Positions 5,830 through 51,437 of a stretch of DNA of 64,000 nt are shown piece by piece. The notes beneath the pieces are model-generated. The model did not search any database. It saw only the letters and a list, made by a program, of their open reading frames with translations, and had not been told where the DNA came from. This DNA comes from Selaginella moellendorffii (lineage: Eukaryota; Plantae; Lycopodiophyta), in assembly GCF_000143415.4 (NCBI RefSeq), contig NW_003314311.1, positions 478,181 through 542,180 of the forward strand. Reading direction: 5' to 3'. Every line of letters begins with the position of its first letter. Position 1 is the first letter of the stretch. The position numbers and the translations under genes are program-made.

Positions 5830-5861
5830 AACATCTTTTGACCGTTTAAAACTTCCATTCC

Positions 5862-17159: not shown

Positions 17160-17198
17160 TGGAGGGACCTTGCGCGAATAAATCAGTGACCCCTCCAT
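17135..17198 (+). promoter_or_regulatory. -1 programmed ribosomal frameshift signal (slippery heptamer plus H-type pseudoknot)
   Basis: G GGA AAC at 17135-17141 in gag frame, 6-nt spacer, stem1 17148-17156/17169-17177, stem2 17159-17166/17191-17198. pol is in the -1 frame. Confidence 0.85.
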
Positions 17199-24899: not shown

Positions 24900-26508
24900 A
24901 TGGAGAGTGAGGAGGAAGAGGAGGGCGCTGCCGCGGCCAAATTCGCGAGCTGGAGCATCTACGAGAATCGCGAGGTCTTGGCCAGGTACGCGGTGCTGGA
25001 TCCCATTGGATCCGGCGCCTACTCGGATGTCTACCACGGGAAGCGCCGTGACGACGGCCTCCACGTCGCGCTCAAGGAAGTCCACGACGGCAAGAGCTCC
25101 TCGCGCGAATTGGCCGCTCTCCAGCTCCTCACAAACTCCAGCCATGTCGTCCAGCTCTTGGATCACGTCTGGCTCCATCCCGGGGTATTGCTGGTGCTGG
25201 AATTTCTTCCGGGCTCTCTCGCGGAGGTGATAGAGGAGCGCAAGGAGATCCCTTTCCAGGAATTCGAGGCCAGGAACTGGATGGAGCAAATCCTCAAGGC
25301 AGTGGCCGAGTGCCACAGTGCTGGGATCTTGCACAGGGATCTCAAGCCATCCAATCTTCTCATCTCCAGCGATGGCGTGCTCAAGGTGGCGGACTTTGGC
25401 ACGGCGCTCGTCCTGCCAGTGGAGAACGTCGAGGAAGCGGTGAAGGATTCTTCCAGCGGCAAGAAGAAGCTCAAGGGAGGAGAGGAGTTCGATCGATTTG
25501 GCAGCGGCAAGAAACTCGACAGTGAGGAGATCGAGGCATGGCTCCAGGGCGGGAGCTTCAAGCTCAAGTCGGCCGCGACATCGTCAGAGCAGCAGCCGGA
25601 GACGATGGTTCCAGCACAGATTCGAGGCAGCAAGAGCTACGATCGTCTGGAAATCGAAGACTCCGGCACCGAAGTTAGTCCTCGAGTGAGCGATGCAGAG
25701 GAAGAAGAAGATGGTGCTCGAAGCAGGAACGATCGCTACAGCGATGGCGAGTGGGAGAAAACTTCCAACAAGGATTCCGATTGGTACAAGGTAGAGACTC
25801 TCTCTCTCTCTCTCTTCGAAGTTCTAAGTTCTCTCTCTCGCTCACTCTCTGTTCTAAGTTCTCTCTCTCTCTCTCTCTCTCTCTCGGTTTTACGGTTCTA
25901 AATTCTCGGTTCTCTCTCTCAGTTCTAAGTTCTCTCTCTCTCTCTCTCGGTTTTACGGTTCTAAATTCTCGGTTCTCTCTCTCAGTTCTAAGTTCTCTCT
26001 TTCTCAGAGTTCTAAGATGTGGTGGTGTTCTTCACAGGTCGGAAACGATGACTTCCGCGGAGAGATGACCGACTGCGTGGGGACGAGGTGGTACAAAGCT
26101 CCGGAGCTCCTCTACGGTTCGACGAGCTACAACTTCGCGGTGGATCTCTGGGCCGTGGGTTGCATCCTCGGCGAATTGATCCAAGGCGAGCCACTCTTCC
26201 CGGGAGCCTCCGACATAGATCAGCTGAGCAGGGTGGTGAGAGTTCTCGGTGTTCCAAACGAGACGATCTGGCCCGGGATCTCCAGCCTCCCCGACTATGA
26301 CAAGATTTGCTTCAACGACGATCGCCCGCCAGTGACTCTGGCCAGGATTTTGCCGCGAGCGTCCGGAGAGGCGCTGCGCTTGATCGAGAAGCTCTTGGTC
26401 TACGATCCAGCCTCGCGGCTGTCGGCGTCCCAGGCGTTGTCTCACGAGTTCTTCTCTGGACGCGCCAGCTCCATTGATGCTTGGCTCAATGCTGGAAGTC
26501 GCAAGTAA
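24900..26508 (+). CDS. CDKF;1: Cyclin-dependent kinase F / CDK-activating kinase; exons 24900-25790 and 26038-26508
   Basis: IGSGAYSDVY, VALKEVHD, HRDLKPSNLLI, DFG followed by the CDKF-type long insertion, then EMTDCVGTRWYKAPELLYG and DLWAVGCI. Confidence 0.9.
25796..26016. repeat. CT-microsatellite/minisatellite in the CDKF intron
   Basis: Repeated gttctaagttct(ct)n units and a ~60-bp duplication (ctctcggttttacggttctaaattctcggttctctctctcag x2). Confidence 0.85.
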
Positions 26509-28625
26509 TGGAAGATCCAATGGAAGATCTAAGAAGTTCTTCCAAGAAGTTCTTATCTATCTATCCAGCCATGGAAGACGTCCAGTTCTATGCCACCCTC
26601 CTGCGATCCTGCGAGAAATCCCGGGATCTCGCCAGGGTCAGCGAGATCCAGGATGAGATCCACAGCAGCGGGCACTCCCGGAACATCTTCCTCGCCAATC
26701 TGGTGATCCGCGCATTCGCCAGATGCGGGAGCTTGGATCGCGCGACCCGCGCATTCGCGGCGCTGGATCGCCCCAACGTGTTCTCGTGGAACACGATGAT
26801 CGCCGCTTACGCGCAGCACGGGCGCCTGGATCTCGCGCGAGCGGCATTCCAGCGGATGCCCGCGACAATCCGAACGATTCAGTCGTGGAATTCGATGCTC
26901 CGGGCGCTCGCTGACGCTGGGGAGCTGGGCGACGCGATCGATCTCTTCGCCAGGATGGAGGAGCGCAACACCGTGTCGTGGAATTCCATGATCGAGGCCT
27001 ATTCCCGCGCTGGGCGAGTGACCGAAGCCAAGGATCTCTTCGATCGCATGCCCGACCGGGATTTCTTCTCGTGGGCTGCTATGATCGAGGCCTTCCTCGC
27101 GAGAGATCTCGTGGATCCGGCCATGGAGCTGCTGCGCCGGATCCCACTTCTCGACACCGTGCTCATCACAAGCGCGATCGTCGCGATTGCCAGATTGGGG
27201 CATCTCCGCAAGGCCTGGAGCTTGTTCCTAGGGATTGTAGAGAAGGATCTCATCGCCTGGAACGCGATGCTCCAAGCGTTTGTTCTTCATGGGCATCTGG
27301 AAGGGGCGCAGGATCTCTTCGATCGAATGCCAGAGCACAACGCAGTGACGATCAATACCTTGATCCAAGGCTACGCGCAGCACGGGAGCTTCGATCGAGC
27401 AAAGCTTTTGCTCGATCGATCGCCCGAGAAAGATCCAGTAGGATGGAACTCTCTCATCACAGCATATGCCCTAGCAGGGCAAATGGACCTCGCGAGAGAG
27501 ATGCTGGATCGGCCGTTGGTTTCGCTCAATGTGGTCTCGTGGACGGTCGTGATTAACGGGTACGGACAGCACGGACGAATGGAAGAGGCTAGAGGAATCT
27601 TTAGAGCGATGTCTGGCCACGATTTGGTCGCTTGGAACGCGATCGTTCAAGCGAGCGCGAGTGATACAAAGGTGGCACGTGAATTTTTTGATAGAATGCC
27701 GGAGAGGAATTTAATCTCTTGGAACACCATGATTCAAGCTTATGCTGACCATGGTGATTTGGAAAATGCGGCTATGGTGTTTAAAGCATCGCGAGAGAAA
27801 AATCTCGCAACTTTGAATGCAATGCTTGTGGCAAGCTCGAAGTCCGGAAATTTGGAGGAATCGAAACGAATATTTGACCAAATGCCCGAGTGGGACGTTA
27901 TTTCATGGACTACCATGATCATCGCATATACCCAACATGGGCATTTAGATGCCGCAAGAAGAATCTTTGTTAAGATGCCCGTCCAAAGCATAATAACCTT
28001 CACAGCTCTTTTGTGTGGTTTTCTAGGCAACTTTGAATTTGTTCTCGCGAAAGCTCTTTTCGAAAGATTCCCAGAGCGAGATCTAGTCTCCTGGAATCGA
28101 ATGGTATCAGCATATGCCCAAGCCGGGCATATACCCATTTCCAAAAAACTCTTTGACACAATGCCAGAGAGAGACGTGGTCTCTTGTACGGCGCTAGTCA
28201 CAGTGTATGCCCATTTAGGGTACGGCCTTACAGCCATTGAGAGCTTCCAGACCATGGCCATGGATGCCGTACACCCCAACGACGTAACTTTTCTGGGCGT
28301 GTTCGTGGCGTGCGCGCATTTGGGCCAGGTGGCCGAAATTTACGCCTATTTGGCCTCCATGGAAATCGACTATGGCATCGTCCCAACCCAAGACCACTAT
28401 TCGTGCATCGTCTCGGCGCTGGGGCGATTAGGGCAGCTCAAAGCCGCGATGGAAATGATCCAACGAATGCCCACCGCCGCCACCGCCGCGGCGTGGGAAT
28501 CTTTATTATCCTGCTATAGATTCCAGCGCGATCCACGCCGCGGGATCGATGCCGCCAAGCAAATCCTGGAAATCGAGCCCCAAAACGCCGCGGGCTATGT
28601 GCTGCTATCAAACGCGCTACTTTAG
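26508..28625 (+). CDS. PLS-class PPR protein with E domain, no DYW
   Basis: Intronless PPR array ending HYSCIVSALGRLG..WESLLSCY..YVLLSNALL. First ATG at 26508; 26520 and 26571 are alternatives. Confidence 0.93.
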   Translation: MEDPMEDLRSSSKKFLSIYPAMEDVQFYATLLRSCEKSRDLARVSEIQDEIHSSGHSRNIFLANLVIRAFARCGSLDRATRAFAALDRPNVFSWNTMIAAYAQHGRLDLARAAFQRMPATIRTIQSWNSMLRALADAGELGDAIDLFARMEERNTVSWNSMIEAYSRAGRVTEAKDLFDRMPDRDFFSWAAMIEAFLARDLVDPAMELLRRIPLLDTVLITSAIVAIARLGHLRKAWSLFLGIVEKDLIAWNAMLQAFVLHGHLEGAQDLFDRMPEHNAVTINTLIQGYAQHGSFDRAKLLLDRSPEKDPVGWNSLITAYALAGQMDLAREMLDRPLVSLNVVSWTVVINGYGQHGRMEEARGIFRAMSGHDLVAWNAIVQASASDTKVAREFFDRMPERNLISWNTMIQAYADHGDLENAAMVFKASREKNLATLNAMLVASSKSGNLEESKRIFDQMPEWDVISWTTMIIAYTQHGHLDAARRIFVKMPVQSIITFTALLCGFLGNFEFVLAKALFERFPERDLVSWNRMVSAYAQAGHIPISKKLFDTMPERDVVSCTALVTVYAHLGYGLTAIESFQTMAMDAVHPNDVTFLGVFVACAHLGQVAEIYAYLASMEIDYGIVPTQDHYSCIVSALGRLGQLKAAMEMIQRMPTAATAAAWESLLSCYRFQRDPRRGIDAAKQILEIEPQNAAGYVLLSNALL

Positions 28626-35653: not shown

Positions 35654-36978
35654 ATGAGATCACTGAGAGGATTTCTCGCATTTTTTCTCGCGCTCATCAT
35701 GGAGCGATTTGAGGCCGCAGGATGCTCGAGTGGCGCTCAAATCCGACGGTGGAAAATTGGAAGTCTGGGAAGGCTCCGGAGTTTTCGAAGAGCTCGGAGT
35801 TGTGGCTGGCCGGACGATGCTCAAGCGTAGGGGTCTCTTGCTTCAATTCTATCTCGACTCTTCCCTGCTCCACATTGTCACTTGAGGTATAGCTATAGTT
35901 CTCAAACTGTTCTTCGCTAAGTGCTCGTAAGGTTGGTTCTATGCTTCTAAAACGATAGGTGGTGGACTTGTTGGGATTTTCATCTCTCTTGATGATCGCA
36001 AGACACGGGAGAGCTGTTTTAAAGTCGAGAGAGGAGATGTTGTCGCAGTTCCGCAAGGAGTGGCTTTGTGGTGGTACAACGGCGGAGACGATGAGCTGGA
36101 AATCATGGGAGTCGCACATCTGGCTGACAATCGTCACACAAAGGTAAAATCTCTCTTTTTCCTCCATCGTTCTTGTAGAGACGCTTATCAAAATCCTTTT
36201 TTTTTTTACTTGGCAGCCATTCCTTGTGGCCGGAGGAAAGCCGGACGAGCAAAGCCGGAGAGGATTTGGTTTTGGAGCTGTGATCCATGGCTTCAGCTCG
36301 GGAGTTCTTTCACGGGCCAGCGAAATGGACAAGAGCAGCGTTCGAGACGTCTTGGAGGGCCAAAGCGGTGTTGGCTTTGTCAAAGTGGACGAGGACGTAA
36401 CTTTCCCAGATGCCACCAGCGCTTTCGATCGAAACTTCATCTATCGCCTCCGCGAGATCCATCCCGACGTTCGCGTCCAAAACGGTGGGGAGCGGGATCC
36501 GAGAGCTCAGCAGCTACAAGCTTCCTATTCTACGAACCTTGGGGCTTGGTATCGAGTGTGTCCATCTCAACAAGGTAGAGACCTCCATCTTCTGTGAGTT
36601 AATACTAGTTTTTTCCAGGGAGCCATGGTCGCTCCAAATTGGTTCCATGGTAGCCATCAGATCCTCTACGTCGTTCATGGACGAGGAAGGATCGAGGTCG
36701 TGGATCCCAGTGGCGAGAGAGTTCTCGACGAAGAACTGGAACAATGCTCGCTCGTTGTCGTTCCAGCTTTCTATCCTTCTACTAAAATCGCTTCCAGCGA
36801 GGAGAGCTTCCATTACATCACATTCGTCATATCCCACAGGTATCCAAAACTCTCCAAAATACTCCATAGTTTTTTTTTTAACTTTCTTTTTTGGTGTGTG
36901 TTTAGGCGTATGATCTCTTACTTGTCGGGGAGAAATCCGGTTTACAGAGGAATGGATCGCCTCCAACTCAACAATTAG
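35654..36978 (+). pseudogene. 11S globulin/legumin-like bicupin with signal peptide; frameshift near 35700 and TGA at 35883-35885
   Basis: MRSLRGFLAFFLAL signal, then in another frame DLRPQDARVALKSDGGKLEVW..GLLLQFY, VALWWYNGGDDELEI, PFLVAGG..VIHGFSSGVLSRA, MVAPNWFHGSHQILYVVHGRGRIEVVD..LVVVPAFYP. Confidence 0.8.
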
Positions 36979-37295
36979 GTAAAGACTTCCATTCGAGATA
37001 GCACTGTCAAAGTGGACGAGGATATAACTTTCCCAGGTCGATCCACGGTCCCCAGCTTCAAAACTCCAAAACCGAAGTCTCTTTACTTTCCAATGTAGAA
37101 AAAAAGAGGAGGAAATTAATACTCAAAGTTCCACTGCGCCGATTTGTCTCGATAAAGATTACAACTCAAATGAAGGTTCATGACGAAAATACTTCACTTT
37201 CATTATTCATATTTCAGTCCATTAAATATAATACAGAGGAGGAAGCATTTGCTTGGCATCATTTTGACCAGAATTTGAACCACAATATGTCTACA

Positions 37296-37420
37296 CAGAA
37301 CAATTGCAAATCAAATCATTATTGAGCTAAAAATTGCAAGAATTTTCTTCCTTGATCCAGAACAATTGCAAATCAATTCATTATTGAGCTAAGAATTGCA
37401 AGAATTTTCTTCCTTGATCC
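37296..37420. repeat. 62-bp tandem duplication directly downstream of the metallothionein stop
   Basis: cagaacaattgcaaatcaa..ttgagctaa..aattgcaagaattttcttccttgatcc twice. Confidence 0.85.
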
Positions 37421-37421
37421 A

Positions 37422-37844
37422 TCAACCTTGCACGGGCTTGGGGCAAGAGCAAGTCTCACAACTGCATGTCCGGCCACACTTGCAGAAGGGCTCGCCTGAG
37501 GCAGTTTTCTTGGCACAGGTGCATGTCTCACAATTGCAGTTTGCACCGCATTCGCAGAAAACTCCGTCGTGGCCACTAGCACATGATCAAAAGAGTTGCA
37601 AAACCAGCATAATGTATATATTGGAAAGCAAAGGATCCATAACAGAAACTTACGTTCGTCCAGCAACTCTACCCATTGCTACACATCTGTGATCAAGGGA
37701 TTTGTTGATTGATCAACAGTTCTAGAAACACAAAGATATCTCTTACTTGCAATGATCTCCGCATGGGCATGGATTCCCACAAGCACATCCAGCAGTACAG
37801 TCGCAGGTGGCCGTGATAGCAGCTCCAGCAGCAGCGGTGGCCAT
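37422..37844 (-). CDS. Metallothionein with three Cys-rich domains (type-4/Ec-like), copy 1, 3 exons
   Basis: Spliced product MATAAAGAAITATCDCTAGCACGNPCPCGDHCKCVAMGRVAGRTGHDGVFCECGANCNCETCTCAKKTASGEPFCKCGRTCSCETCSCPKPVQG*. Confidence 0.9.
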
Positions 37845-37916
37845 TGCTAGAGATCAAACAAAGAAGTGAAAGAAAACTATCGATAACACGATTGAGAAAC
37901 CCCCACAGCTGCCGTT

Positions 37917-39922: not shown

Positions 39923-42900
39923 TAACAAATGAGAGTGAATTTCATTGAGAGAATCCAGAACAAGAAGCAAATAAAATATTAAAAGAAACAAGCATAGTAT
40001 ATACTATCCGGTAAACTTAGCTTTTTTATTGTCCTCACATGCAGCACAATCAGGCATCCGAACAAGCATCCAAACAAGGTGTGGAGGATCGGCAAAGCGA
40101 AACATTTTGCGACTTATAGCGCAATGAGCATTAAATCTATAAACTAAAAAATAACTTTATCAACAATAAAAAAGAAAACTGTAAAAAAAATTAAAAGAAG
40201 TTTTATAAAGAATTATTTTAGTTGAGTGAGAAGTTTTAAACTTAAATTTGAAGAGGAAATAAAAGATTAAATAGAGTTTTTAAAGCTGTAGTTTAATTAT
40301 AAATGATAGTTGGTAGAAAAACTTTATAATTAAAGTCTTATTTTTAACAAATTAAAAACCTTGTTAATCCTTTGGACTCTACTACCAAAAGACTTGCTTT
40401 AGGTGATTATAATTAATTATTTAAGTTTGAAAAAAAATTCAATTATGAACAACATGCTTTATGAAAAGGGAAAAAAGCATAGAAAATCTTGCCTGCAATT
40501 GAAGCAATTGATTGTGCTAGCCACAACATCAAGAATCTACCCATATTCACAAAAAAATTCATTAAAACTAAGTAATAACTTAATATTTTTGTTTAAAGAA
40601 AGTACAACAATGTCTTAAAGATTCATAGTAGAAATAATTGTAGAGAAGATTTTTCTTTATATAGATGTTTTTCTCTCTCTATTTTCTTTTGAGGTATAAA
40701 AATAATTTTGTAGTATTTAATTTGAAAATAAGTTGTTGAATGTAAAAGAATCATCTAGTTTGCAAACTAGATCACCAGATATCAATATCAAGATGTAGTG
40801 TGATTCTTTTAACCAACTAACAAAATCAAACCTAAAACCCATTTGATACAAAATGTAAATTCGTAAGTTTAACCTTCCCAATAAGTCATCCAAGGGAAAA
40901 GGCTTATAAATAAATTTTTTCCAATCAATTAAGAGTTTTAAGATACTTAGGGTTAATGGTCATTGAGTTTAACTAATATTTGAACCATTATAGATCATTT
41001 TTCAAGTTATTTTCTTTAGTTGTTTACAATTCATTATACTTCCATACAATCTTACGCTTTCATAAATGGAAGTTAAAAATTGTAGCTCCCTACACTTCTG
41101 ACTTTTAACCAATTGAAAAAAAAGGGTGTACTCTTGTTTATGGGCTTTTTTCCTCTATATTTGAACCCTCATGAATCGTCTCTCATATTTTTTCTTCAAT
41201 TGTTTATAATATCTCATGAAGATGAATATTTTATAATACCTTTGCAATATTTATATATAAATGTTTATATTGATATTTTCTAATATATTGACTATATATT
41301 AAAAGAAAAAAAACTACAAATTATAGTAAATTATTTGTTTCAAGGAGGGATCTAGGCAGATTTTCTTTTAATCTTAGATTGGAAGCTAGTAAATCTTTTT
41401 AGCAACATTGTATACTTCAACTAGAGGCACATCTTTGAGGATAGCTATAAGTTTTTCCAATAAATAAAGGGTTATGTCATTTTCTCAATTGGAAAAGAAT
41501 AATATAAATTGTAGATTCTCTTCCTATCACCTCTATAAATGTTTTATCTAACAATTTAATTGGCATTATCTAAGTTTGGAAATTTTAAAAACTTGAATTT
41601 ATCCTTTTAAAGTAATGTTTCTAATGAGCTCAATAAGCTCCAAAACTTGGAATCCTTCAATCTCTTTAACAATTACTTGTAACATGAGATTCTTTAATCA
41701 CTCACTTAACTATAGGAGTAGAAATGATTTAGAATTTTATACCCTCAACTTCAAATCAACCTTTTTCTTTATATCTTAATACACTAATAATGGAATTTGT
41801 GGTCAATCCATTGAAATAAGGGTATTCAATTTCTAATACACTTGATGATAGTTCAAAGTTGAGTGATTCAATGGTAATCAGGCTTAATCAAAGTTGCACC
41901 CCAAGTGGAAGTCTTCATCCACATATACTGTTTATGCCACAACTTCCAAGGAATTCAAGTAAGCTACTCTAATAATCACCTCCAATCAGAAAAAGGACCT
42001 TGGTAGAAAGTATGGATAAACATCTTTCATATTTCATAACAAATACTTGAAAGCAAGACCTTTATACCATAGGAATAGGTTTATCCATTTAAAGGTTCTT
42101 ACAACCTAGTCCTTAATGATCAAGCTTGCACTAAACTTCAAAAAAAGCACGAGAAATATAAATTAAAATATAACTTTATTGAAACATTTTTTAATAAAGT
42201 GGTGTTTACACAACAATTTCTTTTAAATTCTTTTAAGATAAGCTAGTAAAAAAGAAAGTACCATTTTGGCTGACAAGATCAAACTATTATAGAAATTCCC
42301 TTGCCAAAGTAGGAAGTATGCACAACTATGCTAAAGTAGAGCTACTAAATACAATAAGTTTAATGACTTAAGCTAGAGTAATTCAGAACAAAGGGGAATC
42401 TAGAATTTTTTGTGGAACATAAGAAATAGGAAAAAATTTAGTTATAGTTTGAGCATATAAATAGTAGAGCATAAGTGATCTAGTTGACTTCTTAGGAATA
42501 GAAATAAATGAGAAATTAGTTCTAATTTTAAAAATAAGTTTTTATAGAAGCATAGTAAATGCTTCAATCTATTAGAGTCATAACATTGTGGGAAGCTCCA
42601 TAGGAATTTGAAGACTTTTATAAGGCAATTTTACAAAGACTCTATAGGTAATTGTTGGTAATGAAGATGATCTGCTATAAACTGAAGCAAAGTTTATAAT
42701 TGAAGCAAAAACTCTTGCCCCAAATGAAACAATAGAAAATGGAGTAACACAAGATAAAATATTGGTGTTAATTATTGAATTCTCTTTGATATTTCATGCT
42801 CCACAAATATAGAAGTGTTTGAATCAATGAATTTTTCCTCACTATACTACACACCATAATATCCCATTTAATGGAAATCCATTTCTCTTAAAAAACAGGC

Positions 42901-43213
42901 TAGCAAAGGTGAAAGCTAGTGTCTATGATAATAATTCAAGTGTGCAAACACAATCTAACGTGAGAATAGGAGTGGATGTAATTATTCTTTATCAAGTAAC
43001 AAATAAGGATTGGTATGATTGCAATTGGTACATAGACAAGTGTTGAAGATTTAAAAAAAAAAAAAATATTTAGAGGGAGACCCAGGAACTTTTTTATTTG
43101 AGCAATTATACATGATATTTTTGCACTAGTATCAAGAACAAAGATTTAAAATATAATTTATTTGATATTAATACTGTGCTTCTTGATAAACTTAACTTTG
43201 CAACATAGAGGAA
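38827..43213. mobile_element. Decayed AT-rich element bounded by long imperfect inverted repeats (~38827-39013 / ~43034-43213)
   Basis: Left arm ttcctttatgttgccaagtt..aaataaaaaagttcttggatctctctctaa..cttcaacacttgtct is the reverse complement of right arm agacaagtgttgaag..ttagagggagacccaggaactttttattt..aactttgcaacatagaggaa. No intact ORF inside. Confidence 0.6.
39842..39920. repeat. (TA)n microsatellite
   Basis: About 39 uninterrupted AT/TA units. Confidence 0.97.
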
Positions 43214-43301
43214 CAAAGATGTGAAGCACTTTGGTACCAACTTTTGATAATTAATTTAAATATTAGTTCAAACAAATAAAAAAGCTAAATACAAATCTGT
43301 A

Positions 43302-43537
43302 GATGGTAGTGAATATACCTAAAATATGTTTGGATAATCTAGGGTATTCTACTATCTAATGGTTGTTATTCATTTAGATTAATCTTGTATTTATAATTTA
43401 TAAACATGTATATAATTTATAAACTTTTTTAAACACTTTTTAAAATATTCTTTCTTTATTCTACCATCTAATGGCTGATATGCAATAAGGTTTATCTTGT
43501 GTTTATAAATTATAAACATGTTTATAATTATAAAATT
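43302..43537 (+). repeat. Dispersed AT-rich repeat, copy 3
   Basis: Near-colinear with 12033-12268. Ends ~50 bp from the stop of the Vgb-like gene. Confidence 0.7.
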
Positions 43538-43586
43538 TTGACATTACTGTAGCAACACTTAGCAAATTATTTTAAAAACACCAAAA

Positions 43587-44813
43587 CTATTCCAAGATCT
43601 TCTTGCGCTTCAGTGCGGGCTCCGCGACCGCTAGTGGCAAGTTTGGGTAGTGAACGCGATTGCTGAGCGCGCCCAGTCCCCACAGAGCATATGCGTCGGC
43701 GGCTTGATCGTCTCTGTCAGGGCCCCAGACCGCAGTCCCACTGATGTGCGCAAGAACAGAGGCGCTCAGCTCCGTCACGAACAGCCCCGATCTGTGCTTC
43801 AGCACGCGGTGCGCCATCGAGGACTGCGTAGGCAGCACGATCACCTCCTCCTTTTCGAGGTGGAGCTGCTCTGGATTCTTAGGATCTGGCTGCAGGTGAA
43901 CAGTGAACACCGCATTGATATTCGCGGGGGAGCCGATTGAAGATCCTAGCAGCCAGATCTTGAGATTCTTGCCCTGGCTGCGATGGTAGACACCGTTGTC
44001 GAAAGCGAGATGGAGAAGTCCGGCAGTAGTCGCGGTGGTGAGATGGAACCAGGTGATCCATGGCTCGTTCGTCACCTTGTTGATGCTAATCCTTCCAAAG
44101 GTACCGGTTCCCCCTTTCAAATTCCCAAGCAGGACGAACCAGGCATTTCCGTCGGGGCCAGTGATGAGCCCAACAGGGGTGCTTCCCTTCTCAGTCGGAA
44201 TCTCAATCTCGAATGTGACTTCGGTATTCCTCTGTAGGCAGAATATTCTGCTACTCTCGTCCATGCTGGCGTACACGTACTCGTCTGTCGGCGCCACAAA
44301 GATGGGGCGGCGGCTGCAGGGGTAGTATGCCACGACAGCAAACTCCCGGTGATTCACCTTCGCCACGTGGCAGCTGTCCTTACACGTCACCCACAGGTAG
44401 TCGGAGCCGTCCTCTATGACGACGTGGGGGCCTCGGAGAGGCTTTGGAAGCCGAAACCTCCTCTCCACCCGTGGGGGCTTATTCTGTTGAGTCGCAATGG
44501 GATCAATGAGAAGTAAGCTGTTGTCGAACTGGAGCGTCACCCAGGCATAGCCCGGGTAAGCTTTGGAATCGCGGAGGCCATGAGCTCCTTGGTATGTGGA
44601 TCCGTCCAGGGTGAATTTGGAAGCAAATGTCGGGCTGCCGGTTACTGGATCCAGTGCGACTTTGATGATCCCATTGCACTCCTGCTGGGTGATGAGCAGC
44701 AGCTCGTCTCCAATGGGGACGACCTCGTGCGTTTGAACGGTTGCAGGCAGCGCGTACTCCGAGACTTTCTTCTGGATACCCACAATGGGGACGATGCTGT
44801 TGCCGTTGTCCAT
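43587..44813 (-). CDS. Vgb (virginiamycin B lyase)-like beta-propeller protein of microbial appearance, 408 aa
   Basis: Intact ORF from ATG 44813 with propeller-blade motifs GAHGL..YAWVTLQ, GPHVVIEDGSDYLWVT, GSTPVGLITGPDGNAWFV, GTFGRI, GLFVTELSASVLAH. Function inferred from motif resemblance only. Confidence 0.75.
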   Translation of the reverse strand: MDNGNSIVPIVGIQKKVSEYALPATVQTHEVVPIGDELLLITQQECNGIIKVALDPVTGSPTFASKFTLDGSTYQGAHGLRDSKAYPGYAWVTLQFDNSLLLIDPIATQQNKPPRVERRFRLPKPLRGPHVVIEDGSDYLWVTCKDSCHVAKVNHREFAVVAYYPCSRRPIFVAPTDEYVYASMDESSRIFCLQRNTEVTFEIEIPTEKGSTPVGLITGPDGNAWFVLLGNLKGGTGTFGRISINKVTNEPWITWFHLTTATTAGLLHLAFDNGVYHRSQGKNLKIWLLGSSIGSPANINAVFTVHLQPDPKNPEQLHLEKEEVIVLPTQSSMAHRVLKHRSGLFVTELSASVLAHISGTAVWGPDRDDQAADAYALWGLGALSNRVHYPNLPLAVAEPALKRKKILE

Positions 44814-45689
44814 TACGCTCTGCAGAGACGATGTGAGCAATTCTCAACATTCCAAAGTATCCTTACCTTCTTGGTGGTTGAACCAAAGTTTGAGAATGCA
44901 ACTAGCTGCTGCAGCTCTTGATCGCCCAGGTGAGAGAAGAGGACTTTCAGAGCTCCAACTTGACCGCCTCACCTTGGGGCTGTGAAGATTTGCACGAAAA
45001 CAATGAGGCAACAAGCTGGGCTTTATAGCCCCGTGAGTTGCAATGTCTACACTGTGACATCTACAGAGCGCATTTCTGTTCACATATTGTGTGGCTGTGG
45101 CTTTGCACAGGGAGAGAATGTACAAATTATTGGCGCAAAATGCCAAATAACTCACATAATGCCAAATAACACAAGTTTCACGTTGGGGATAAGGTTTAGA
45201 TTTATTATATTAATTGCTAAGTGCTTTTGTTTAGTGTAATATGATATACAAGGAGAAAATGTCTTTTCAGATGTATCAACGTGCTGCATGCCATGATCCA
45301 AGAATTTCTTCCCTGCTCTAAGATAATCGAGAATCTCTGGAGAAGAAGTCCAATGAAAAATGGAACGAAGTACTGCGACAAGACTTTTTGGAGTATCATA
45401 TACGTCCATACACCTTTGCTAAAAGTTGAAGGTGATGAAGTGGTGCTGGATTCCCACCTGACAATAGATGAGTTAATCAAGTATAAATATTTTTTTGTTA
45501 GCATATAATTTACTATGACTAATCCATTATATACTAATTTTGAATTAGCAAAATCTAGAGAATTTATTTGTGAGAGATAAATTTTAATTTTGAAACTATC
45601 ATGAGCAAGATGAGCACTATGGACCCTTGCAACCATTAAGAGAACATTGTAAAGGAATGTAGAATTTCTCCTGCCAAATAAGATATCGT

Positions 45690-46240
45690 AGGAAAAAAAA
45701 AAAAAGAGATGATAAGATTCGTTTTGGACAATGGCAGCTTTAGTAGAAGGATAGAAAGCTGAAATAACAATTAGCGAGCCTTGTTCCACTTGTTCGTCGA
45801 TAACTCTCATCCACGGCCCTCGATCTTTCCTCCCTCGTCCACCATGGAACCAATTTGGAGCGACCATATCTTCTTGGAAGAAACAATTAGTTCACAGAAG
45901 AATTTGAAAGAAAAAGAGTTGTTGAGCTGGACGCAGTCCATTCCAAGTCCCAGGGTTAATAGATTAGGAAGCTATGGATCTGGCGGAAGTGATAGATGAA
46001 GTTTCGATCGAAAGCATTGGTGGCATCTGGGAAAGTTATATCCACTTCGACAATGCCAACACCACTTTATCTCTCCAAGACATCTCGAACGCTGCTCTTG
46101 TCTATCTCCCAGGCTCGTGAAGGAACTCCCGAGCTAAAGCCATGGATCACAGCTCCAAAACCAAATCCTCTCTGGCTCGTCCTGCTTTCCTCCGGCCAGA
46201 AGGAATGCCTGCCAAATACGAAACAATAGCTTCTCTACAG
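45690..46240 (-). pseudogene. Truncated second copy of the 11S-like cupin
   Basis: Near-identical segments to 36140-36910 (GFGAVIHGFSSGV, FPDATNAFDRNFIY, MVAPNWFHG, GSLIVISAFYPSTK) with deletions. N-terminal half absent. Confidence 0.85.
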
Positions 46241-46559
46241 GAACGATGGAGAAAAAGAGAGATTTTTACCAGGGTGTTTTTACCAGGGCGTGAGATCACA
46301 GGGCTGCATGGAACACCATCCTTGGCGAAGGAGACCACTGGATGGCTGGTAGCCACCGTCGCACCTCTTTAGAACCACTCCGAGCTTCCTTTTACGTCCA
46401 CCAGAGCCCGCGAGATTGCAAAAGAAGAGGTTTTAGCGGAAGTCGGATTCTGCTGGAGCAATCTCCCAGTAAAACGCTGCTTCGTGAGATCACCTGTTTA
46501 ATTGTCAAGAGCGCTGGGATTGATAGCTTGGACCTATCAAATCATATCAACGCCCTGGT

Positions 46560-47364
46560 GCTCGTATCAACGCCCTGGTAAACATCGAGGTACTCAACCC
46601 AGCTTCGCTGGAGATCTCGGGAATAGAAGTGGCAGGCATTGACGAAGATCCAGTGGAAAATCTCGACTTTGCAGAATCATGAGTACATTTGCGCATTTCG
46701 TTTCACAGCTGCCAGGCTACGAAGGATTACGAACGGTCTTCATACAACACAGGGAACAGCAGCAAAGCCCACGTCTTACTTACTTACTCGTCCGTTGCTT
46801 TGAAAAACTTCCCCGTGGAACAGTGGTTTCGATCCTTCAGTGCGAGGCAGGACAAAGCTGAGCGAGAATTTTTTTCTGTAACAGGCAGCATTGTTTCCAA
46901 GCACAGAGAACAGGCCAAGAATCTAGCCTCGATTGTTCTTCTTCTGCATCGTACTTGGAAACTCATCACATTCAAAGGCAAGTGCACAGTCCAATGACGA
47001 AATTTTCACGGTCCACTTTGTTTATAACGTAGGCTCTTGTGAGCCGTCATGTCAAACCATGGGGTACTACTTCCTTCTCTTTTCCTCCTTTTCTTCAGTC
47101 GCTTCTATAGAGACAATCGAACTTGTAGACTGTGGTGGCTTGTCCAGGTCTTGCACAGATCCTTATTACGACTGTCTAACGAACTTTCCTTGCAACGTGC
47201 ACTCAAAAGAATGGCTCTCCTCACCGCTCGTCTGTCCTGGTAAACCTCCTGGGCTTGCGATCATGCTCGGGAATGGATGCTCAGTGCAGATTTGGAATTG
47301 TCCATCTACGCATGACCAACGATTTGTACCTTGTCAACCTTCCAATTGTCTATCCTTTCATTAG
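46560..47364 (+). pseudogene. Possible degenerate LRR-protein fragment
   Basis: Broken frames with LRR-like stretches (IETIELVDCGGL, DCLTNFP, VQIWNCP). No intact gene. Confidence 0.25.
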
Positions 47365-47563
47365 ATTTCTTATCTCATACAAAACATAATATAGTGGCAT
47401 TTCTTTTACCAGCAGTAACAATTGGTGGTGAACTCGTGCCTGCCCTTGCATAATGCATGACCCATTCTATAAGAGTGGGCAACTGTGGGCATTTCTCAAT
47501 CAAGTTCCTCACTGTTCTAATAGAGTGTTTTTTCGTCCTCTTTTCTTCACTTTTTGTTTTGCA

Positions 47564-47972
47564 ATGGCCACCGCTGCTGCTGGCGCTGCTGCTATCACGC
47601 CCACCTGCGGCTGCACTGCGGGGTGTGCTTGTGGGAATCCATGCCCATGCGGAGATAATTGCAAGTAAGCGATATCATTTGTGTTTTTATAGCTTTTGAT
47701 TGATTCACAAATCCTTGGATCACAGATGTGCAGCAACGGGTGCTGCTGGACGAAGGTAAGCTTTGTGTTTTCCTTTCAATTAAATGCTGATTCGGCAACT
47801 CTTTTGATCCTGTGATAGTGGCCACGACGGAGTTTTCTGCGAATGTGGTGAAAACTGCAAGTGTGAGACATGCACCTGTGCCAAGATAACGGCCTCAGGC
47901 GAGCCCTTCTGCAAGTGCGGCCGGACATGCAGCTGCGAGACTTGCTCTTGCCCCAAGCCAGTGCAAGGTTGA
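47564..47972 (+). CDS. Metallothionein with three Cys-rich domains (type-4/Ec-like), copy 2, 3 exons
   Basis: Spliced product MATAAAGAAAITPTCGCTAGCACGNPCPCGDNCKCAATGAAGRSGHDGVFCECGENCKCETCTCAKITASGEPFCKCGRTCSCETCSCPKPVQG* (20 Cys). TGCATG at 47454 and TATAAG at 47468 upstream. Confidence 0.92.
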
Positions 47973-49756
47973 TGGACTTGAAAGAGAGATCTTTATGCAA
48001 TTTTTAGATCAATAATAATTATAAAGTTTTGCTTACAGCTGTGGTCAAGCTGATTTCTTCTCGATCTGGAAAAAGAGACTTCTTCTTTTCTAAGACCTTT
48101 TTTCTCTTCTTTTACAGGACTTCCTCGCGCATGCTGGGCGAACAAACGGCAAAGAAGCTGGTCCGGAATGCTCAGCGTTTTGATTGTCCTTTTTATTTCT
48201 TACGTTTTGTGGCTTTTATAGAAAATCTTTAGAAATCTCCATGAAGCAGAGCAAAGAAAAGCAGCATTATGTCATTATATTCCATTCTTTTAAGTATATT
48301 CTAATCAATTGCGTAACATTTCGAACCAAGTATTTTTATTCCAGCAATCCATAAACCAACACTTTTGGTTACCAACTGCTTCCAGGACTATCTCCACGAC
48401 ATCAACCCTGGGAGAATCATTGGCCCAGCATCCACAACGCCACAGGCTACACCAAGGCGGAAGACAGAAGCCGCTCACGCCTAGAGATGCCCATCTCTCT
48501 GTGCAATACAGGAACAGAGATTCTATCTTATGTCATATATGACTACCCTGCCTACATGCGGCTATGGCTCTTCTTTCCCACACTAGACTTCCATGCCCAA
48601 GACCTCTAGCATTCATGGGAAACACGACCATGGCAGCAATGACTGCTCTTGATCTATGTGTCATTGAAGACTGGAGGGCACCGCTCATCAAAGCAACATG
48701 CCCCCACTTCCCAGACTGAAACATATAGCAAATGCTTGAATGCCCGACTCCCTGCTCTCCTCCCCACTCAAAAGTCCCATGCTCTCACAGGTTAACGGCA
48801 ACTATAAACACAATTATCTATTTATCTATCTATCTATCTTTGGTTATTCTTTCCAAAGTTTTTTCACTTCCATTCTCTGTTGTTTATATGGTCGGCCACT
48901 GGACAGTCTACCTGGACATTGATTTGGGGTGGATATGGAATCGACTCCTCCCATCCCTTCGAAGATGAGTTGGCATCCACAACTCATCTTCGTGTTGAAT
49001 ATCCAATTCGTGTTGAGCACCCAAGTATTGGAAGATTTCAGACTCCATTCCTAGAAATAGCAATTTGCTAACATCTTCCCAAATGTAAGGATGCTCCTTT
49101 GGGTGTTGATCAAGTCGGTGGATATTAAATCTCACCTCCTCAACCTTGTTAAACACGCTTGCCAGCCAATCCTTAAGGAGAACAGCATTTGCAAGGTGTC
49201 TTCATCCATCCCAGTCTGGGATTTTAAAGTTGTCTCGATGATAATGGCAAGAGCACATTCGTTGTTGTGGTAGTCCATCCATACCCCGAGCAGCTCTCAA
49301 AACTCCCGGCTGAAGCTCAAGAATTGACAGCCGAAAAGTTTGCGGCAGCATGAGAAAAGTTTCTCCATCCTCCATTGAAATGAATAGAATCTAAACCTTA
49401 TGAGCATTTAAATAGCACAAAGGTTTATGCTAGGGACTAAAAGGTCACATATACCCTAATATCCCTTTTGTACATTGCATCTAGTACAAATTTTGTGCAT
49501 AATGCAGCCATTCTATAAACGGGCAGCTTTGGGCGTGTCTCCCAAGATGCGTCAGAAGGTGCGGCAGGTAGATTGATGAGCCGGGACAAAAGGCTTGGTG
49601 GCAGAAAACTTAGAAGAGTTTTGCAAATGTAAGATTATCAAAACAATTTACTGTAATCTATTGGTCTCATGTTTCTTAGTGGGTACTACTAGACTATGTA
49701 AACAGCTAATGAATGAAGGAATGAATCACTGTGTCTCATCTTCACTTGATCGAGAA

Positions 49757-50139
49757 ATGGCCACCACTGCTGCTGTTGCTTCTGCTACCTGCGGCTGCAC
49801 TGCGGGTGTGCTTGCGGGAGTCCATGCCCATCTGGAGCTAATTGCAAGTAAGTGATAAACGCATGATTTGTGTTTCTGTAACTTCTGATTGATCGACAAC
49901 TCCGGATATTCAGAGCTGCTGGACGAAAGTAAGCTTCTACTATTCTTCTCAATTTAAGGGTTGGCAACTTTTTTGATCCTGTGGTAGTGGCCACGACGGA
50001 ATTTTCTGCGCATGCGGTGCAAACTGCAAATGTGAGACATGCACCTGTGCCAAGAAAACGGCCTCAGGCGATCCCTGTTGCAAGTGCGGCCGGACATACA
50101 GCTGAGACTTGCTCTTGCCCCAAGCCTGTGCAAGGTTGA
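49757..50139 (+). pseudogene. Metallothionein copy 3, frameshifted
   Basis: Colinear with copy 2, but 1-nt loss in exon 1 (gcgggtgtg vs gcggggtgtg), shortened exon 2 and a 2-nt loss in exon 3 giving TAC AGC TGA. Confidence 0.85.
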
Positions 50140-51437
50140 TGGACATCAACGAAGAATTTTCTTGCATCTCTGAGAAATAACTTCTTGATGACAGGTTTAG
50201 CACTTCTGTGTACATACAGTAGTCCAAATTCCAAATTCAGATGGTCAAGAGAATCCTGCTAATTGTAAGCAAATACGTACAAAGTATAGGTTTAAAATTG
50301 TAAGCTAAGGATGATAAAATATGTTTTTATCATGGACGGTTTTCTTCATCATTGGAACTATATACTTACACAGGTAGTTGCATAAAGAACGGGACAAATC
50401 GGGGCAGTGGAATCTGGACGGCGTTATATAAACTTTGAGTGGAGCTTAGGCGATTCCTATAGCTTGACGGCACAGCTTGATTCTTTTGTTGTTTGTGATT
50501 GGGACTTCCAAATTGTTTGGATGCTAATGACCTTCATTTGTTCTTGTTTTCAATATTCATGGTTGGTATGGTCACTGGAAAAGTATGCTTTATATACTAA
50601 TTTGCTATGATCATGATCCACTTAAGGTCGGTTGTTTGTTAATTACATACTAATTTGATCACTTTAGCTGGGCAGACTTGCGGCAGAAAGTGTCAAGAAC
50701 GTTTCCTGTGACTTCACATGGGGCTGTGAGATCTTAAAACTTAAAACTCGTACAGTTCGAGAAAGTTGGTCAAAAAGAGAGGATTTGAGGTTGAAAGTTT
50801 GGAAGTTTGTCTCAACTTAAACGCTATTGAGTGAAAAACAAGTGAAGGGAAGGTTCACACAACTCTAAACTTTTTCATAAATCGTGCCGACTATCAGACA
50901 ACATGCGTTGGGACGGGCATGACTGCATGAGTGCTCCACCTCGATGGAATAATACCGCGCACAAGCATCGAGTATTTGTATAATTTTTACTAAAATACTA
51001 AATTAGAGCATGGTCTAACTTAATTATTTTTGGAATCCACCGCGTCGAAAAATCGGATATCCATTAGAAAATTTTCTCGCACAAGAGAATACCAGAATTA
51101 CTATCCTGCCAATGGCATATGGCGTATATAATGGACATTCCAAGATGGAATATTGTGGGCATCTAGATTCAGCCCAATGAACATGCACCACGTGGATTCG
51201 TGTGTTGTCCACGTGTGCGTGGTGCAAAGTTGCGTTTCTTACAAATTGCGCGCCATGAGAGGAAGTCTCCACAAAGTTTTGTCTCCCAACGCAACTTCCC
51301 TTCATGTTCCACGGGGAATAGTTGTTTTACCGTGATTTGCGAGAGATTTATTCATCCATATCCTGCAAGTAGAGTTCTTGAGAGCGATTCAAGTTAGTTG
51401 ATCTCGAAAAGAGCGTTTCTCGATTTCTATAAGAAGA

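What the first reader, a model, noticed from the sequence alone, without database searches (positions are those of the whole stretch)
43587..45030. Candidate horizontally acquired Vgb-lyase-like beta-propeller gene that appears domesticated
Seen: an intact, intronless 408-aa CDS stranded in decayed AT-rich DNA inside the cupin/MT cluster. It has Vgb-type blade motifs (PVGLITGPDGNAWFV, GTFGRI, LFVTE) and several His-containing motifs (QTHE, GAHGL, GPH, LLHL, AHR). Plant-style expression signals: TATAAA (~45023-45028, minus) and a 47-nt GT-AG 5'UTR intron (44820-44866) ending 6 nt before the ATG. The C-terminus is NLS-like (PALKRKK). Established: Vgb lyases linearise streptogramin-B cyclic depsipeptides. 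I know such proteins from bacteria and fungi, not from seed plants. Inference: a microbe-to-plant transfer that may detoxify microbial cyclic peptides or bind metal alongside the neighbouring MTs. Substrate unknown.
Basis: partly seen in the sequence, partly recalled or inferred. Interest (0 to 1): 0.8.

Follow-up and report, generated by a model that had tools for sequence, protein, structure and literature searches.

The report
Anciently acquired Vgb-like propeller gene
This is an expressed gene of the lycophyte Selaginella for a seven-bladed propeller protein distantly related to bacterial streptogramin lyases; among plants only clubmosses and ferns have it, so it most likely entered the ancestor of vascular plants from a microbe over 400 million years ago, and its reaction is still unknown.

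Summary
There is an intact 408-aa ORF (ATG 44813, stop 43587-43589, minus strand) and a 47-nt GT-AG intron in the 5'UTR, which assembled contigs of two sequencing runs skip. The window is Selaginella, a lycophyte, not a seed plant: the protein is 97% identical to SELMODRAFT_270650, in conserved gene order.

The protein folds as a Vgb-like seven-bladed propeller (VIA-align Z 33, hhalign probability 98.3%). It fails the Vgb membership test. It scores below the family cut-offs, the residue matching Vgb Glu268 is never Glu, and no vat gene sits beside its bacterial relatives.

That subfamily is mainly bacterial. It also occurs in Ascomycota, in Mucoromycota and, among plants, only in lycophytes and ferns. 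In the ML tree, lycophytes (98/92) and ferns (100/100) group together (94/71) inside a bacteria-dominated clade. A single clade of all eukaryotes is rejected (p-AU 1e-13). The plant genes have intronless coding regions, host-like GC3 and a plant-only basic C-terminal tail resembling a nuclear localisation signal.

Best reading: one ancient transfer before the lycophyte-fern split, then loss in seed plants, leaving a conserved and probably metal-dependent enzyme. Its substrate and the donor are unresolved.

The parts
43587..44813 (-). Single-exon CDS, 408 codons plus the stop (TAG at 43589-43587), encoding a seven-bladed Vgb-like beta-propeller
   Evidence: ORF; 97% identity to SELMODRAFT_270650; model pLDDT 87, pTM 0.86; Vgb fold and homology
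43599..43610 (-). Codons 402-405 (KRKK): basic, NLS-like motif in the disordered C-terminal tail
   Evidence: pLDDT <50 for residues 394-408; K[KR]x[KR] in the last 30 aa in 8 of 13 named plant proteins plus PKKR in both Diphasiastrum copies, 0 of 21 bacterial, 1 of 25 fungal
43809..44729 (-). Span holding the five invariant His codons: H29 (44729-44727), H78 (44582-44580), H130 (44426-44424), H268 (44012-44010), H335 (43811-43809). Each lies at the start of the innermost strand of blades 1, 2, 3, 6 and 7.
   Evidence: invariant in all plant and fungal sequences and all but one bacterial or unnamed sequence, of 84; strand positions; H335 aligns with Vgb H270, H29 with Vgb Y18
44814..44819 (-). 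Last 6 nt of the 5'UTR (AGCGTA), between the intron and the ATG
44820..44866 (-). 47-nt GT-AG spliceosomal intron in the 5'UTR
   Evidence: GT at 44866-65, AG at 44821-20; joint 44819->44867 in contigs of X5 and X8; X1 holds an unspliced form
44867..44941 (-). 5'UTR first exon, minimum extent. Contigs reach 44941 in X5, 45125 in X10 and 45371 in X8.
   Evidence: table 8
45022..45027 (-).
   Evidence: sequence; contigs of two runs run through it
43522..43586 (-). 3'UTR. Contigs end at 43542 (X1) and 43522 (X5).
   Evidence: table 8

Best explanation
The gene is a genuine, transcribed nuclear gene of Selaginella. It encodes a seven-bladed beta-propeller of a small, sharply bounded and uncharacterised subfamily of the Vgb-lyase superfamily.

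Origin. The subfamily is mainly bacterial and scattered over at least eight phyla. One copy most likely entered the common ancestor of vascular plants, before lycophytes and ferns split about 420 Ma ago. The source was a bacterium, or possibly an ascomycete-line fungus. The gene was then inherited vertically and lost on the seed-plant line. In plants the coding region stayed intronless but became host-like: GC3 matches neighbouring genes, a spliced 5'UTR intron appeared, and a disordered C-terminal tail ending in a basic KRKK-type motif was added, which probably sends the protein to the nucleus.

Mechanism (inferred). The top face of the propeller carries a ring of five invariant histidines, one at the start of the innermost strand of blades 1, 2, 3, 6 and 7. 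Invariant Arg336 and near-invariant Gln43, Lys145, Asp185 and Ser291 surround it. In Vgb these same blade positions hold the catalytic residues Tyr18, His228 and His270. I therefore take the protein to be an active enzyme that binds a divalent metal and a small-molecule substrate at the mouth of the central channel. It probably carries out a lyase- or hydrolase-type cleavage related to Vgb chemistry but not identical to it.

My odds for each step: real expressed host gene 0.97; foreign origin 0.85; a single transfer before the lycophyte-fern split 0.7; active enzyme 0.65; metal-dependent 0.5; true streptogramin or depsipeptide lyase 0.15; nuclear location 0.5.
For: Host gene:
- It lies between PPR, kinase, WD40, LRR and Ty3/gypsy genes.
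- Gene order matches S. moellendorffii scaffold GL377574.1.
- Contigs of two runs show the spliced 5'UTR.
- GC 0.57 and GC3 0.70 match the neighbouring genes.

Fold and homology:
- Foldseek's best PDB hits are the Vgb entries (E 4.5e-15, target TM 0.81).
- VIA-align gives Z 33.2, rmsd 2.8 A, 290 of 295 residues aligned in register.
- hhalign against a true-Vgb alignment gives probability 98.3%, E 1.4e-14 over 275 columns.

Bounded subfamily: an exhaustive HMMER search of 1.84 billion cluster representatives finds only 25 clusters at E<=1e-30.

Distribution: the named plant hits are Selaginella, Diphasiastrum (2 copies), Pteridium, Adiantum (5 copies in two species) and Ceratopteris (2 copies). 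No seed plant, bryophyte or alga was found.

Tree (84 sequences, LG+C20+F+G4):
- Lycophytes 98/92, ferns 100/100, the two together 94/71.
- Plants, Ascomycota and the bacterial P0002/P0293/P0294 group together at 98/95, nested among proteobacterial, planctomycete, myxobacterial, Longimicrobiaceae and Terriglobia sequences.
- P0293 lies on a gene-dense bacterial contig.
- A single clade of all eukaryotes is rejected (lnL difference 128, p-AU 1e-13).

Other points:
- Coding regions are intronless in Selaginella, Diphasiastrum and Adiantum.
- The basic C-terminal tail is essentially confined to plants.
- The five His and Arg336 are invariant in all 19 plant-clade sequences.
- A 'virginiamycin B lyase' homologue, not sequence-checked against this subfamily, was detected as protein in Dryopteris gametophytes (PMC5360702).
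Against: - The root is not inferred, and plant monophyly has only moderate support (94/71). Two transfers from closely related donors are not excluded.
- A plants-plus-Ascomycota clade is not rejected (p-AU 0.275), so the donor could be fungal.
- No coordinates were available to measure the geometry of the His ring. Metal binding is inferred from blade periodicity only.
- hhalign places H268 four residues away from Vgb H228.
- No biochemical data exist for any subfamily member, and bacterial neighbourhoods give no functional clue.
- dN/dS between the two Selaginella alleles is 0.58, based on only 20 differences, so recent constraint is weakly shown.
- The run type (RNA) is a guess by the tool.
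- Absence from bryophytes and gymnosperms depends on how well the databases cover them.
Confidence: 0.6

Rival explanations
1. A recent transfer private to Selaginella: a microbial Vgb lyase gene landed in this AT-rich stretch of the cupin/MT region.
For: The GC-rich, intronless CDS sits in AT-rich DNA. The nearest non-plant relatives are bacterial, at 46-53% identity.
Against: Orthologues in Diphasiastrum and four fern species branch as the species do. GC3 equals that of neighbouring host genes. The nearest bacterial protein is only about 50% identical. The locus is in the same gene order in the reference assembly.
Confidence: 0.03
2. Contaminant DNA or a chimeric assembly: the gene belongs to a bacterium or fungus living on the plant.
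For: Relatives are common in soil bacteria and in endophytic Xylariales.
Against: Plant genes lie on both sides within the 64-kb window. The same arrangement occurs in an independent assembly. A spliceosomal intron in the 5'UTR is removed in contigs of two runs. Homologues lie on chromosome-scale scaffolds of 83-210 Mb in Diphasiastrum, Adiantum and Ceratopteris.
Confidence: 0.01
3. Old vertical inheritance: the gene was present in an early eukaryote or early streptophyte and was lost many times.
For: It occurs in three eukaryote groups. The plant branching follows the species tree.
Against: A single clade of all eukaryotes is rejected (p-AU 1e-13). Mucoromycota group with Actinobacteria, away from the plants. 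No algal, bryophyte, seed-plant, animal or protist member was found in three large searches. Coding regions are intronless in plants and fungi alike.
Confidence: 0.07
4. Transfer between fungus and plant: the plant gene came from an ascomycete-line fungus (or the reverse), and only that first eukaryote took it from bacteria.
For: Plants and Ascomycota fall in the same 98/95 clade. Forcing them into one clade costs only 8.45 lnL units (p-AU 0.275).
Against: The best tree leaves the bacterial P0002/P0293/P0294 unresolved beside both groups. Plant proteins are closer to those bacteria (52-53% identity) than to fungi (40-46%). The Ascomycota members seen are all Pezizomycotina, which I believe are younger than the lycophyte-fern split (my own knowledge).
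Confidence: 0.15
5. It is a working streptogramin-B-type lyase that opens microbial cyclic depsipeptides.
For: The fold is the same. His335 aligns with the catalytic His270 of Vgb, and Glu348 lies next to the Glu284 position.
Against: The Glu268 position is never Glu in 84 members, and Tyr18 is His. Ferns have Gln at position 348. Three further invariant His have no counterpart in Vgb. Scores lie below the Pfam and NCBIfam cut-offs. Bacterial members have no vat or other resistance gene beside them, unlike true vgb genes.
Confidence: 0.15
6. In plants it is a non-catalytic nuclear scaffold, used like a WD40 propeller for protein binding.
For: The tail is NLS-like. Generic WD40 propellers superpose almost as well as Vgb (Z 29-30).
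Against: Every plant sequence keeps all five His, Arg336, Gln43 and Lys145 unchanged from the bacterial state. That is hard to explain without the ancestral chemistry or metal site.
Confidence: 0.1

Closest known systems
Vgb(A)/Vgb(B) streptogramin B lyase (PDB 2Z2N, 2Z2O, 2Z2P, 2QC5)
   Same: Seven-bladed propeller superposable blade for blade (Z 33, rmsd 2.8 A). Homology is detectable by profile comparison (probability 98.3%). A His occupies the position of catalytic His270. Conserved polar residues sit at the same blade positions on the top face.
   Different: Identity is only 16-19%, and the protein is about 110 residues longer because of long loops in blades 1-2 and 6-7 and a tail. The Glu268 position is Met in Selaginella and never Glu. 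Tyr18 is His. There are three extra invariant His in blades 1-3. No vat gene is linked. Family scores are below the cut-offs. The protein occurs in eukaryotes.
CylK / BrtB (Vgb-like propeller domain used for alkylation in cyanobacterial natural-product synthesis; PMC8916777)
   Same: This is precedent that the Vgb-type propeller has been reused for chemistry other than streptogramin cleavage, with the Vgb catalytic residues replaced.
   Different: CylK has an extra Ca-binding N-terminal domain, and its active site lies at the interface between the two domains. In CylK the Vgb catalytic positions are hydrophobic, whereas here they are polar and rich in His.
Bacterial genes taken up by early vascular plants, such as the aerolysin-like genes of Ceratopteris and Selaginella (PMC9477723)
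   Same: The same distribution (lycophytes and ferns, absent from seed plants) and the same inference of a bacterial source early in vascular-plant history.
   Different: A different protein family. Here the plant copies also gained a shared NLS-like tail. I found no paper describing this family in plants as a transfer.
Propeller enzymes with a His-lined metal centre at the hub, such as the CuZ site of nitrous oxide reductase (analogy recalled from my own knowledge, not tested)
   Same: A seven-bladed propeller in which histidines from several blades point at the central channel.
   Different: No sequence or specific structural match was found. Here there are five His, not seven, and the metal is unknown.

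Membership tests
Vgb streptogramin B lyase | Seven-bladed beta-propeller superposable on Vgb | tested here: met
   Foldseek E 4.5e-15, target TM 0.81. VIA-align Z 33.2, rmsd 2.8 A, 290 of 295 residues, model 13-364 against chain 1-295.
Vgb streptogramin B lyase | Score above the curated family cut-offs (Pfam PF24684; NCBIfam Vgb(A) and Vgb(B)) | tested here: not met
   Pfam 39.1 bits against a cut-off of 50, covering residues 119-244 only. NCBIfam 24.7 and 20.4 bits against a cut-off of 600.
Vgb streptogramin B lyase | Catalytic His270 | tested here: met
   hhalign aligns His335 with His270. His335 is invariant in 84 of 84 sequences.
Vgb streptogramin B lyase | His228 | tested here: inconclusive
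   His268 holds the same blade-6 position by blade periodicity. hhalign places it four residues off, beside a gap, in a low-confidence stretch.
Vgb streptogramin B lyase | Glu268. It is invariant in true Vgb; its role as a Mg2+ ligand is from my memory of Korczynska et al. 2007. | tested here: not met
   It aligns with Met333. That column holds M, K, W, A, F, Y or S and never E in 84 sequences. Glu268 is invariant in the Vgb alignment A2.
Vgb streptogramin B lyase | Glu284 | tested here: inconclusive
   Glu348 aligns with Met283, one residue before Glu284, at the end of the alignment. Position 348 is Gln in 11 of the 19 plant-clade sequences.
Vgb streptogramin B lyase | Tyr18 | tested here: not met
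   It aligns with the invariant His29.
Vgb streptogramin B lyase | Bacterial genes lie beside vat or other streptogramin-resistance genes | tested here: not met
   True vgb genes sit next to vat. Fourteen bacterial loci of this subfamily share no neighbour, and none is a resistance gene.
Vgb streptogramin B lyase | Linearises streptogramin B by elimination | not testable with these tools
   Needs an enzyme assay.
   212 sequences pass the score and coverage filter. The residue pattern is shown. Only 25 clusters at 50% identity reach E<=1e-30.
Plant gene of horizontal (microbial) origin | The plant clade is nested inside prokaryotic diversity with support | tested here: met
   The 98/95 clade holding the plants lies within bacterial lineages. 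A single clade of all eukaryotes is rejected, p-AU 1e-13. Caveat: the tree is rooted at the midpoint only.
Plant gene of horizontal (microbial) origin | Patchy distribution among plants | tested here: met
   Only lycophytes and ferns appear among the named hits of two word-index searches and one exhaustive profile search.
Plant gene of horizontal (microbial) origin | Truly integrated in the host genome and expressed there | tested here: met
   Flanking host genes, matching gene order in a second assembly, and a spliced 5'UTR intron in run contigs.
Plant gene of horizontal (microbial) origin | Donor lineage identified | tested here: inconclusive
   The nearest sequences are unnamed metagenomic bacteria (P0293). 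A plants-plus-Ascomycota clade is not rejected (p 0.275).

The most novel reading that the evidence does not exclude
The five-His propeller is a metalloenzyme with a chemistry not yet described for the Vgb fold. Seed-free vascular plants have kept it for over 400 million years as a nuclear enzyme, with an NLS added after its transfer from bacteria. It would be acting on a nuclear or endogenous substrate rather than on a microbial antibiotic.
Probability: 0.25. Interest if true: 0.7.

Novelty: new variant of a known kind. Interest (0 to 1): 0.5.

Why it matters
- **A clean case of ancient gene transfer.** The gene entered early vascular plants from a microbe and has a clear history: acquired before lycophytes and ferns split, given a eukaryotic UTR intron and a targeting tail, then lost in seed plants. 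I found no paper describing it.
- **A defined target for enzymology.** The work delimits a small subfamily of Vgb-like propellers whose active-site pattern differs from the only characterised members. Databases label these proteins 'virginiamycin B lyase' or 'methanethiol oxidase' automatically, and neither name is supported here.
- **Genetics is feasible.** The family is present in the transformable fern Ceratopteris.

Tried and rejected
- **Gene neighbourhood.** Fourteen bacterial loci share no neighbouring gene. Pfam scans of 20 neighbours show no recurring theme. Two fungal loci are not biosynthetic clusters. In Thalassolituus a MerR regulator and an ArsP permease lie next door. That is a single case and not enough to build on.
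- **Protein atlas and structure atlas.** They returned only Vgb, SGL and NHL labels and the ascomycete sister cluster.
- **Literature.** Nothing was found for SELMODRAFT_270650, or for Vgb together with Selaginella, ferns or horizontal transfer, beyond one fern proteome hit. Korczynska 2007 and Richards 2009 are not held in the library. The roles I give to Vgb residues are therefore from memory, backed only by their invariance in alignment A2.
- **'Methanethiol oxidase' (UniRef name).** No SBP56 or other supporting Pfam hit appeared at E<=1, so I rejected the name.
- **Generic Vgb-repeat proteins.** They could not serve as a reference for the catalytic residues. I replaced them with true vgb genes from plasmids.
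- **dN/dS between the two Selaginella alleles.** There are too few differences for it to be informative.
- **Geometry of the His ring.** I could not measure it because model coordinates are not exposed.
- **Organisms behind P0013, P0301 and P0121.** These mRNA-like contigs could not be assigned to a species.
Full report
**1. The observation**

The ORF is present as described. The ORF listing gives 43587..44840 on the minus strand. The first ATG is at 44813, which gives 408 residues ending in KRKKILE.

Read by eye, the proposed 47-nt intron has GT at 44866-44865 and AG at 44821-44820. Six bases (AGCGTA) follow before the ATG.

I laid the assembled contigs of four public runs from four studies on 42900-45700. 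They cover only about 43522 to 44941. The flanks 42900-43369 and 45438-45700 are empty. A joint that skips exactly 44820-44866 appears in one contig of run X5 and in a 977-nt contig of run X8. The tool only guesses that these runs are RNA. Coverage limited to the transcript together with a GT-AG skip is what RNA would give. X1 carries an unspliced form.

TATAAA lies at 45027-45022. Contigs of X8 (reaching 45371) and X10 (44912-45125) run through it, so the transcription start is not settled.

The CDS has GC 0.52-0.57 and the spacer below it 0.18-0.30. Neighbouring host genes have the same composition: GC/GC3 is 0.57/0.70 here, 0.57/0.69 for the kinase exon, 0.54/0.66 for the LRR gene and 0.56/0.63 for the WD40 gene. 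The contrast is therefore the ordinary one between genes and spacers.

**2. Which genome this is**

The best database hit is SELMODRAFT_270650 of Selaginella moellendorffii: 408 aa, 97% identical. The window is from a lycophyte, not a seed plant.

The window also carries three PPR genes, a kinase exon, a Ty3/gypsy polyprotein, a WD40 gene and an LRR receptor-type gene. On reference scaffold GL377574.1 the orthologue sits in the same order: LRR, WD40, two small genes, this gene, Cupin_1. Flanks are 95-98% identical. The CDS differs at 20 bases (dS 0.024, dN 0.014). Contamination or a chimeric assembly is excluded.

**3. What the protein is**

- Pfam finds Vgb_lyase (PF24684) below its cut-off: 39.1 against 50 bits, residues 119-244 only.
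- The NCBIfam Vgb(A) and Vgb(B) models give 20-25 bits against a cut-off of 600.
- AlphaFold2 with a 60-sequence alignment gives a confident seven-bladed propeller: pLDDT 87, pTM 0.86, with a disordered tail at 394-408.
- Foldseek's best PDB matches are the four Vgb entries (E 4.5e-15, target TM 0.81).
- VIA-align gives Z 33.2, rmsd 2.8 A and 290 of 295 residues aligned, model 13-364 against chain 1-295. The blades therefore match one to one. Generic WD40 propellers follow at Z 29-30.
- I fetched true vgb genes from plasmids: Vgb(A) beside vat(A) in Enterococcus, a Priestia copy beside vat, and a Streptomyces copy. In their alignment Tyr18, His228, Glu268, His270 and Glu284 are invariant.
- Profile-profile comparison of my family alignment with that set gives probability 98.3%, E 1.4e-14 over 275 columns, in register.

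Residue by residue:
- His29 aligns with Tyr18.
- Met333 aligns with Glu268.
- His335 aligns with His270.
- Glu348 aligns with Met283, one residue before Glu284.
- The blade-6 stretch is poorly aligned. His268 falls four residues from His228, although it holds the same blade position.

**4. The subfamily and its signature**

Across 84 sequences from bacteria, fungi and plants, His29, His78, His130, His268, His335 and Arg336 are invariant, apart from a few bacterial or unnamed sequences. Gln43, Lys145, Asp185 and Ser291 are nearly invariant. Position 333 is never Glu. Position 348 is Gln in ferns.

Each sits at the start of the innermost strand of blades 1, 2, 3, 6 and 7. In Vgb this is the blade position that carries Tyr18, His228 and His270.

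The exhaustive HMMER search of 1.84 billion cluster representatives finds 1402 proteins at E<=1e-3 but only 25 at E<=1e-30. The subfamily is thus small and well separated from the mass of Vgb-repeat proteins.

It fails the Vgb membership test on the cut-offs, on Glu268, on Tyr18 and on gene context. It works on the same scaffold and probably at the same face of the propeller.

**5. Distribution**

- **Plants:** Selaginella, Diphasiastrum complanatum (two neighbouring genes), Pteridium aquilinum, Adiantum capillus-veneris (three), A. nelumboides (two) and Ceratopteris richardii (two). No seed plant, bryophyte or alga appeared in two word-index searches or among the named clusters of the exhaustive search.
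- **Fungi:** many Pezizomycotina. Separately, Mucoromycota: Gigaspora, Racocetra, Linnemannia, Mortierella and Cunninghamella.
- **Bacteria:** Longimicrobiaceae, Leptolyngbya, Chromobacterium, Duganella, Andreprevotia, Terriglobia, Planctomycetota, Myxococcaceae, Nevskia, Rhodothermales, Thalassolituus, Catenulispora and Pseudonocardiaceae.
- **Protein-level evidence:** a fern gametophyte proteome reported a 'virginiamycin B lyase' homologue (PMC5360702). I did not check its sequence against this subfamily.

**6. Phylogeny**

The tree is a careful IQ-TREE search: 84 rows, 395 columns, LG+C20+F+G4 by PMSF.

- Lycophytes group at 98/92 (with the unnamed mRNA-like P0013).
- Ferns group at 100/100.
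- The two join at 94/71.
- That plant clade, an Ascomycota clade (100/98) and the bacterial P0002 and P0293/P0294 form a clade at 98/95. This clade is nested among proteobacterial, planctomycete, myxobacterial, Longimicrobiaceae and Terriglobia sequences.
- P0293, the closest non-plant relative, lies on an 11.7-kb gene-dense bacterial contig.
- Mucoromycota sit elsewhere, next to Actinobacteria.
- Forcing all eukaryotes into one clade costs 128 lnL units (p-AU 1e-13).
- Forcing plants with Ascomycota costs 8.45 (p 0.275), so the immediate donor is unresolved.
- The root is at the midpoint only.

I left out near-duplicates, including extra Thalassolituus members and loci identical to listed proteins. 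I also thinned the unnamed metagenomic sequences, keeping only those under 62% identical to any sequence already retained.

**7. Signs of adaptation to the plant host**

- The coding region is intronless in Selaginella (1227 nt), Diphasiastrum (1323 nt) and Adiantum (1626 nt), and also in two fungi.
- The Selaginella gene has a spliced intron in its 5'UTR and host-like GC3.
- Plant proteins carry a C-terminal extension that bacterial and fungal proteins lack. A K[KR]x[KR] cluster lies in the last 30 residues of 8 of 13 named plant proteins, and both Diphasiastrum copies have PKKR. It is also present in 4 of 6 unnamed members of the plant clade. The counts elsewhere are 0 of 21 bacterial, 1 of 25 fungal and 0 of 19 other unnamed proteins. 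In the model the tail is disordered.
- A shared derived tail argues for one origin of the plant genes and suggests nuclear import. Import itself is inferred, not shown.

**8. Reading**

The simplest history is one transfer into the vascular-plant stem lineage, vertical descent into lycophytes and ferns, and loss on the seed-plant line. The vascular-plant ancestor is put at about 420 Ma in PMC12448838.

All 19 plant-clade sequences keep the five-His pattern unchanged, which points to retained chemistry. I propose a divalent-metal site at the mouth of the central channel and a cleavage reaction on a small molecule. This step is inferred.

No functional clue came from gene neighbourhoods or from the atlas searches.

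**9. Novelty**

Transfer of bacterial genes into early vascular plants is a known pattern. The aerolysin-like genes of Ceratopteris and Selaginella are one example (PMC9477723). I found no report of this family.

The protein is a variant of the Vgb kind with a different active-site pattern and no characterised member. I rate interest as moderate.

Noticed in passing
window 36143-37847 versus 45974-48020 (inverted), and 47603-47977 versus 49787-50144: The propeller gene lies between inverted, 83-89% identical copies of a unit that holds a cupin fragment and a Cys-rich MT-like ORF. A third partial copy follows at about 49.8-50.2 kb. Cupin_1 is confirmed for 36625-36975 only.
   Followed up: partly
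window 47560-47668 (+) and 49735-49855 (+): Short ORFs rich in CGC, CxC and CPC, resembling metallothioneins (MATAAAG...CGCTAGCACGNPCPCGDNCK). Pfam recognises no family, and the second copy looks altered.
   Followed up: partly
window 43330-43560: Two roughly 80-nt AT-rich direct repeats (…catgtttataa(a/t)ttataaa…ccattagat(a/g)gtagaata) lie just downstream of the 3'UTR. They may be a small repeat element.
   Followed up: no
window 44285-44283 (codon 177) and 44225-44190 (codons 197-208): The window allele has Asp177 where the reference allele has His. Five of the 11 amino-acid differences between the alleles cluster in one surface loop (197-208). No invariant residue is affected.
   Followed up: partly
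window 17024-20047 (+): A long open Ty3/gypsy polyprotein ORF (protease, RT, RNase H, integrase), possibly a young retroelement.
   Followed up: no
window 4291-7940 and 26481-28622: Three intronless PPR genes. Two of them are divergently arranged only 33 bp apart.
   Followed up: no
P0323, P0329, P0328, P0333, P0330, P0129 (Mucoromycota): A second eukaryote group carries the subfamily and branches with Actinobacteria (97/87), away from plants and Ascomycota. This implies a separate transfer between domains.
   Followed up: partly
P0011, P0039, P0285-P0292 (ferns): Fern proteins have a 60-100-residue N-terminal extension with a shared EQLL-GAND-KLS-type motif. Lycophytes, fungi and bacteria lack it. 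Its function is unknown.
   Followed up: no
L084 8001-11000 (Thalassolituus oleivorans) and L083 10001-15448 (Penicillium taxi): The bacterial homologue is followed by a MerR regulator and an ArsP permease. The Penicillium homologue lies 2 kb from a multicopper oxidase. These are isolated hints of a link to metals.
   Followed up: no
P0001 and P0333 database names: UniRef names these proteins 'Methanethiol oxidase'. No Pfam hit supports that name.
   Followed up: partly
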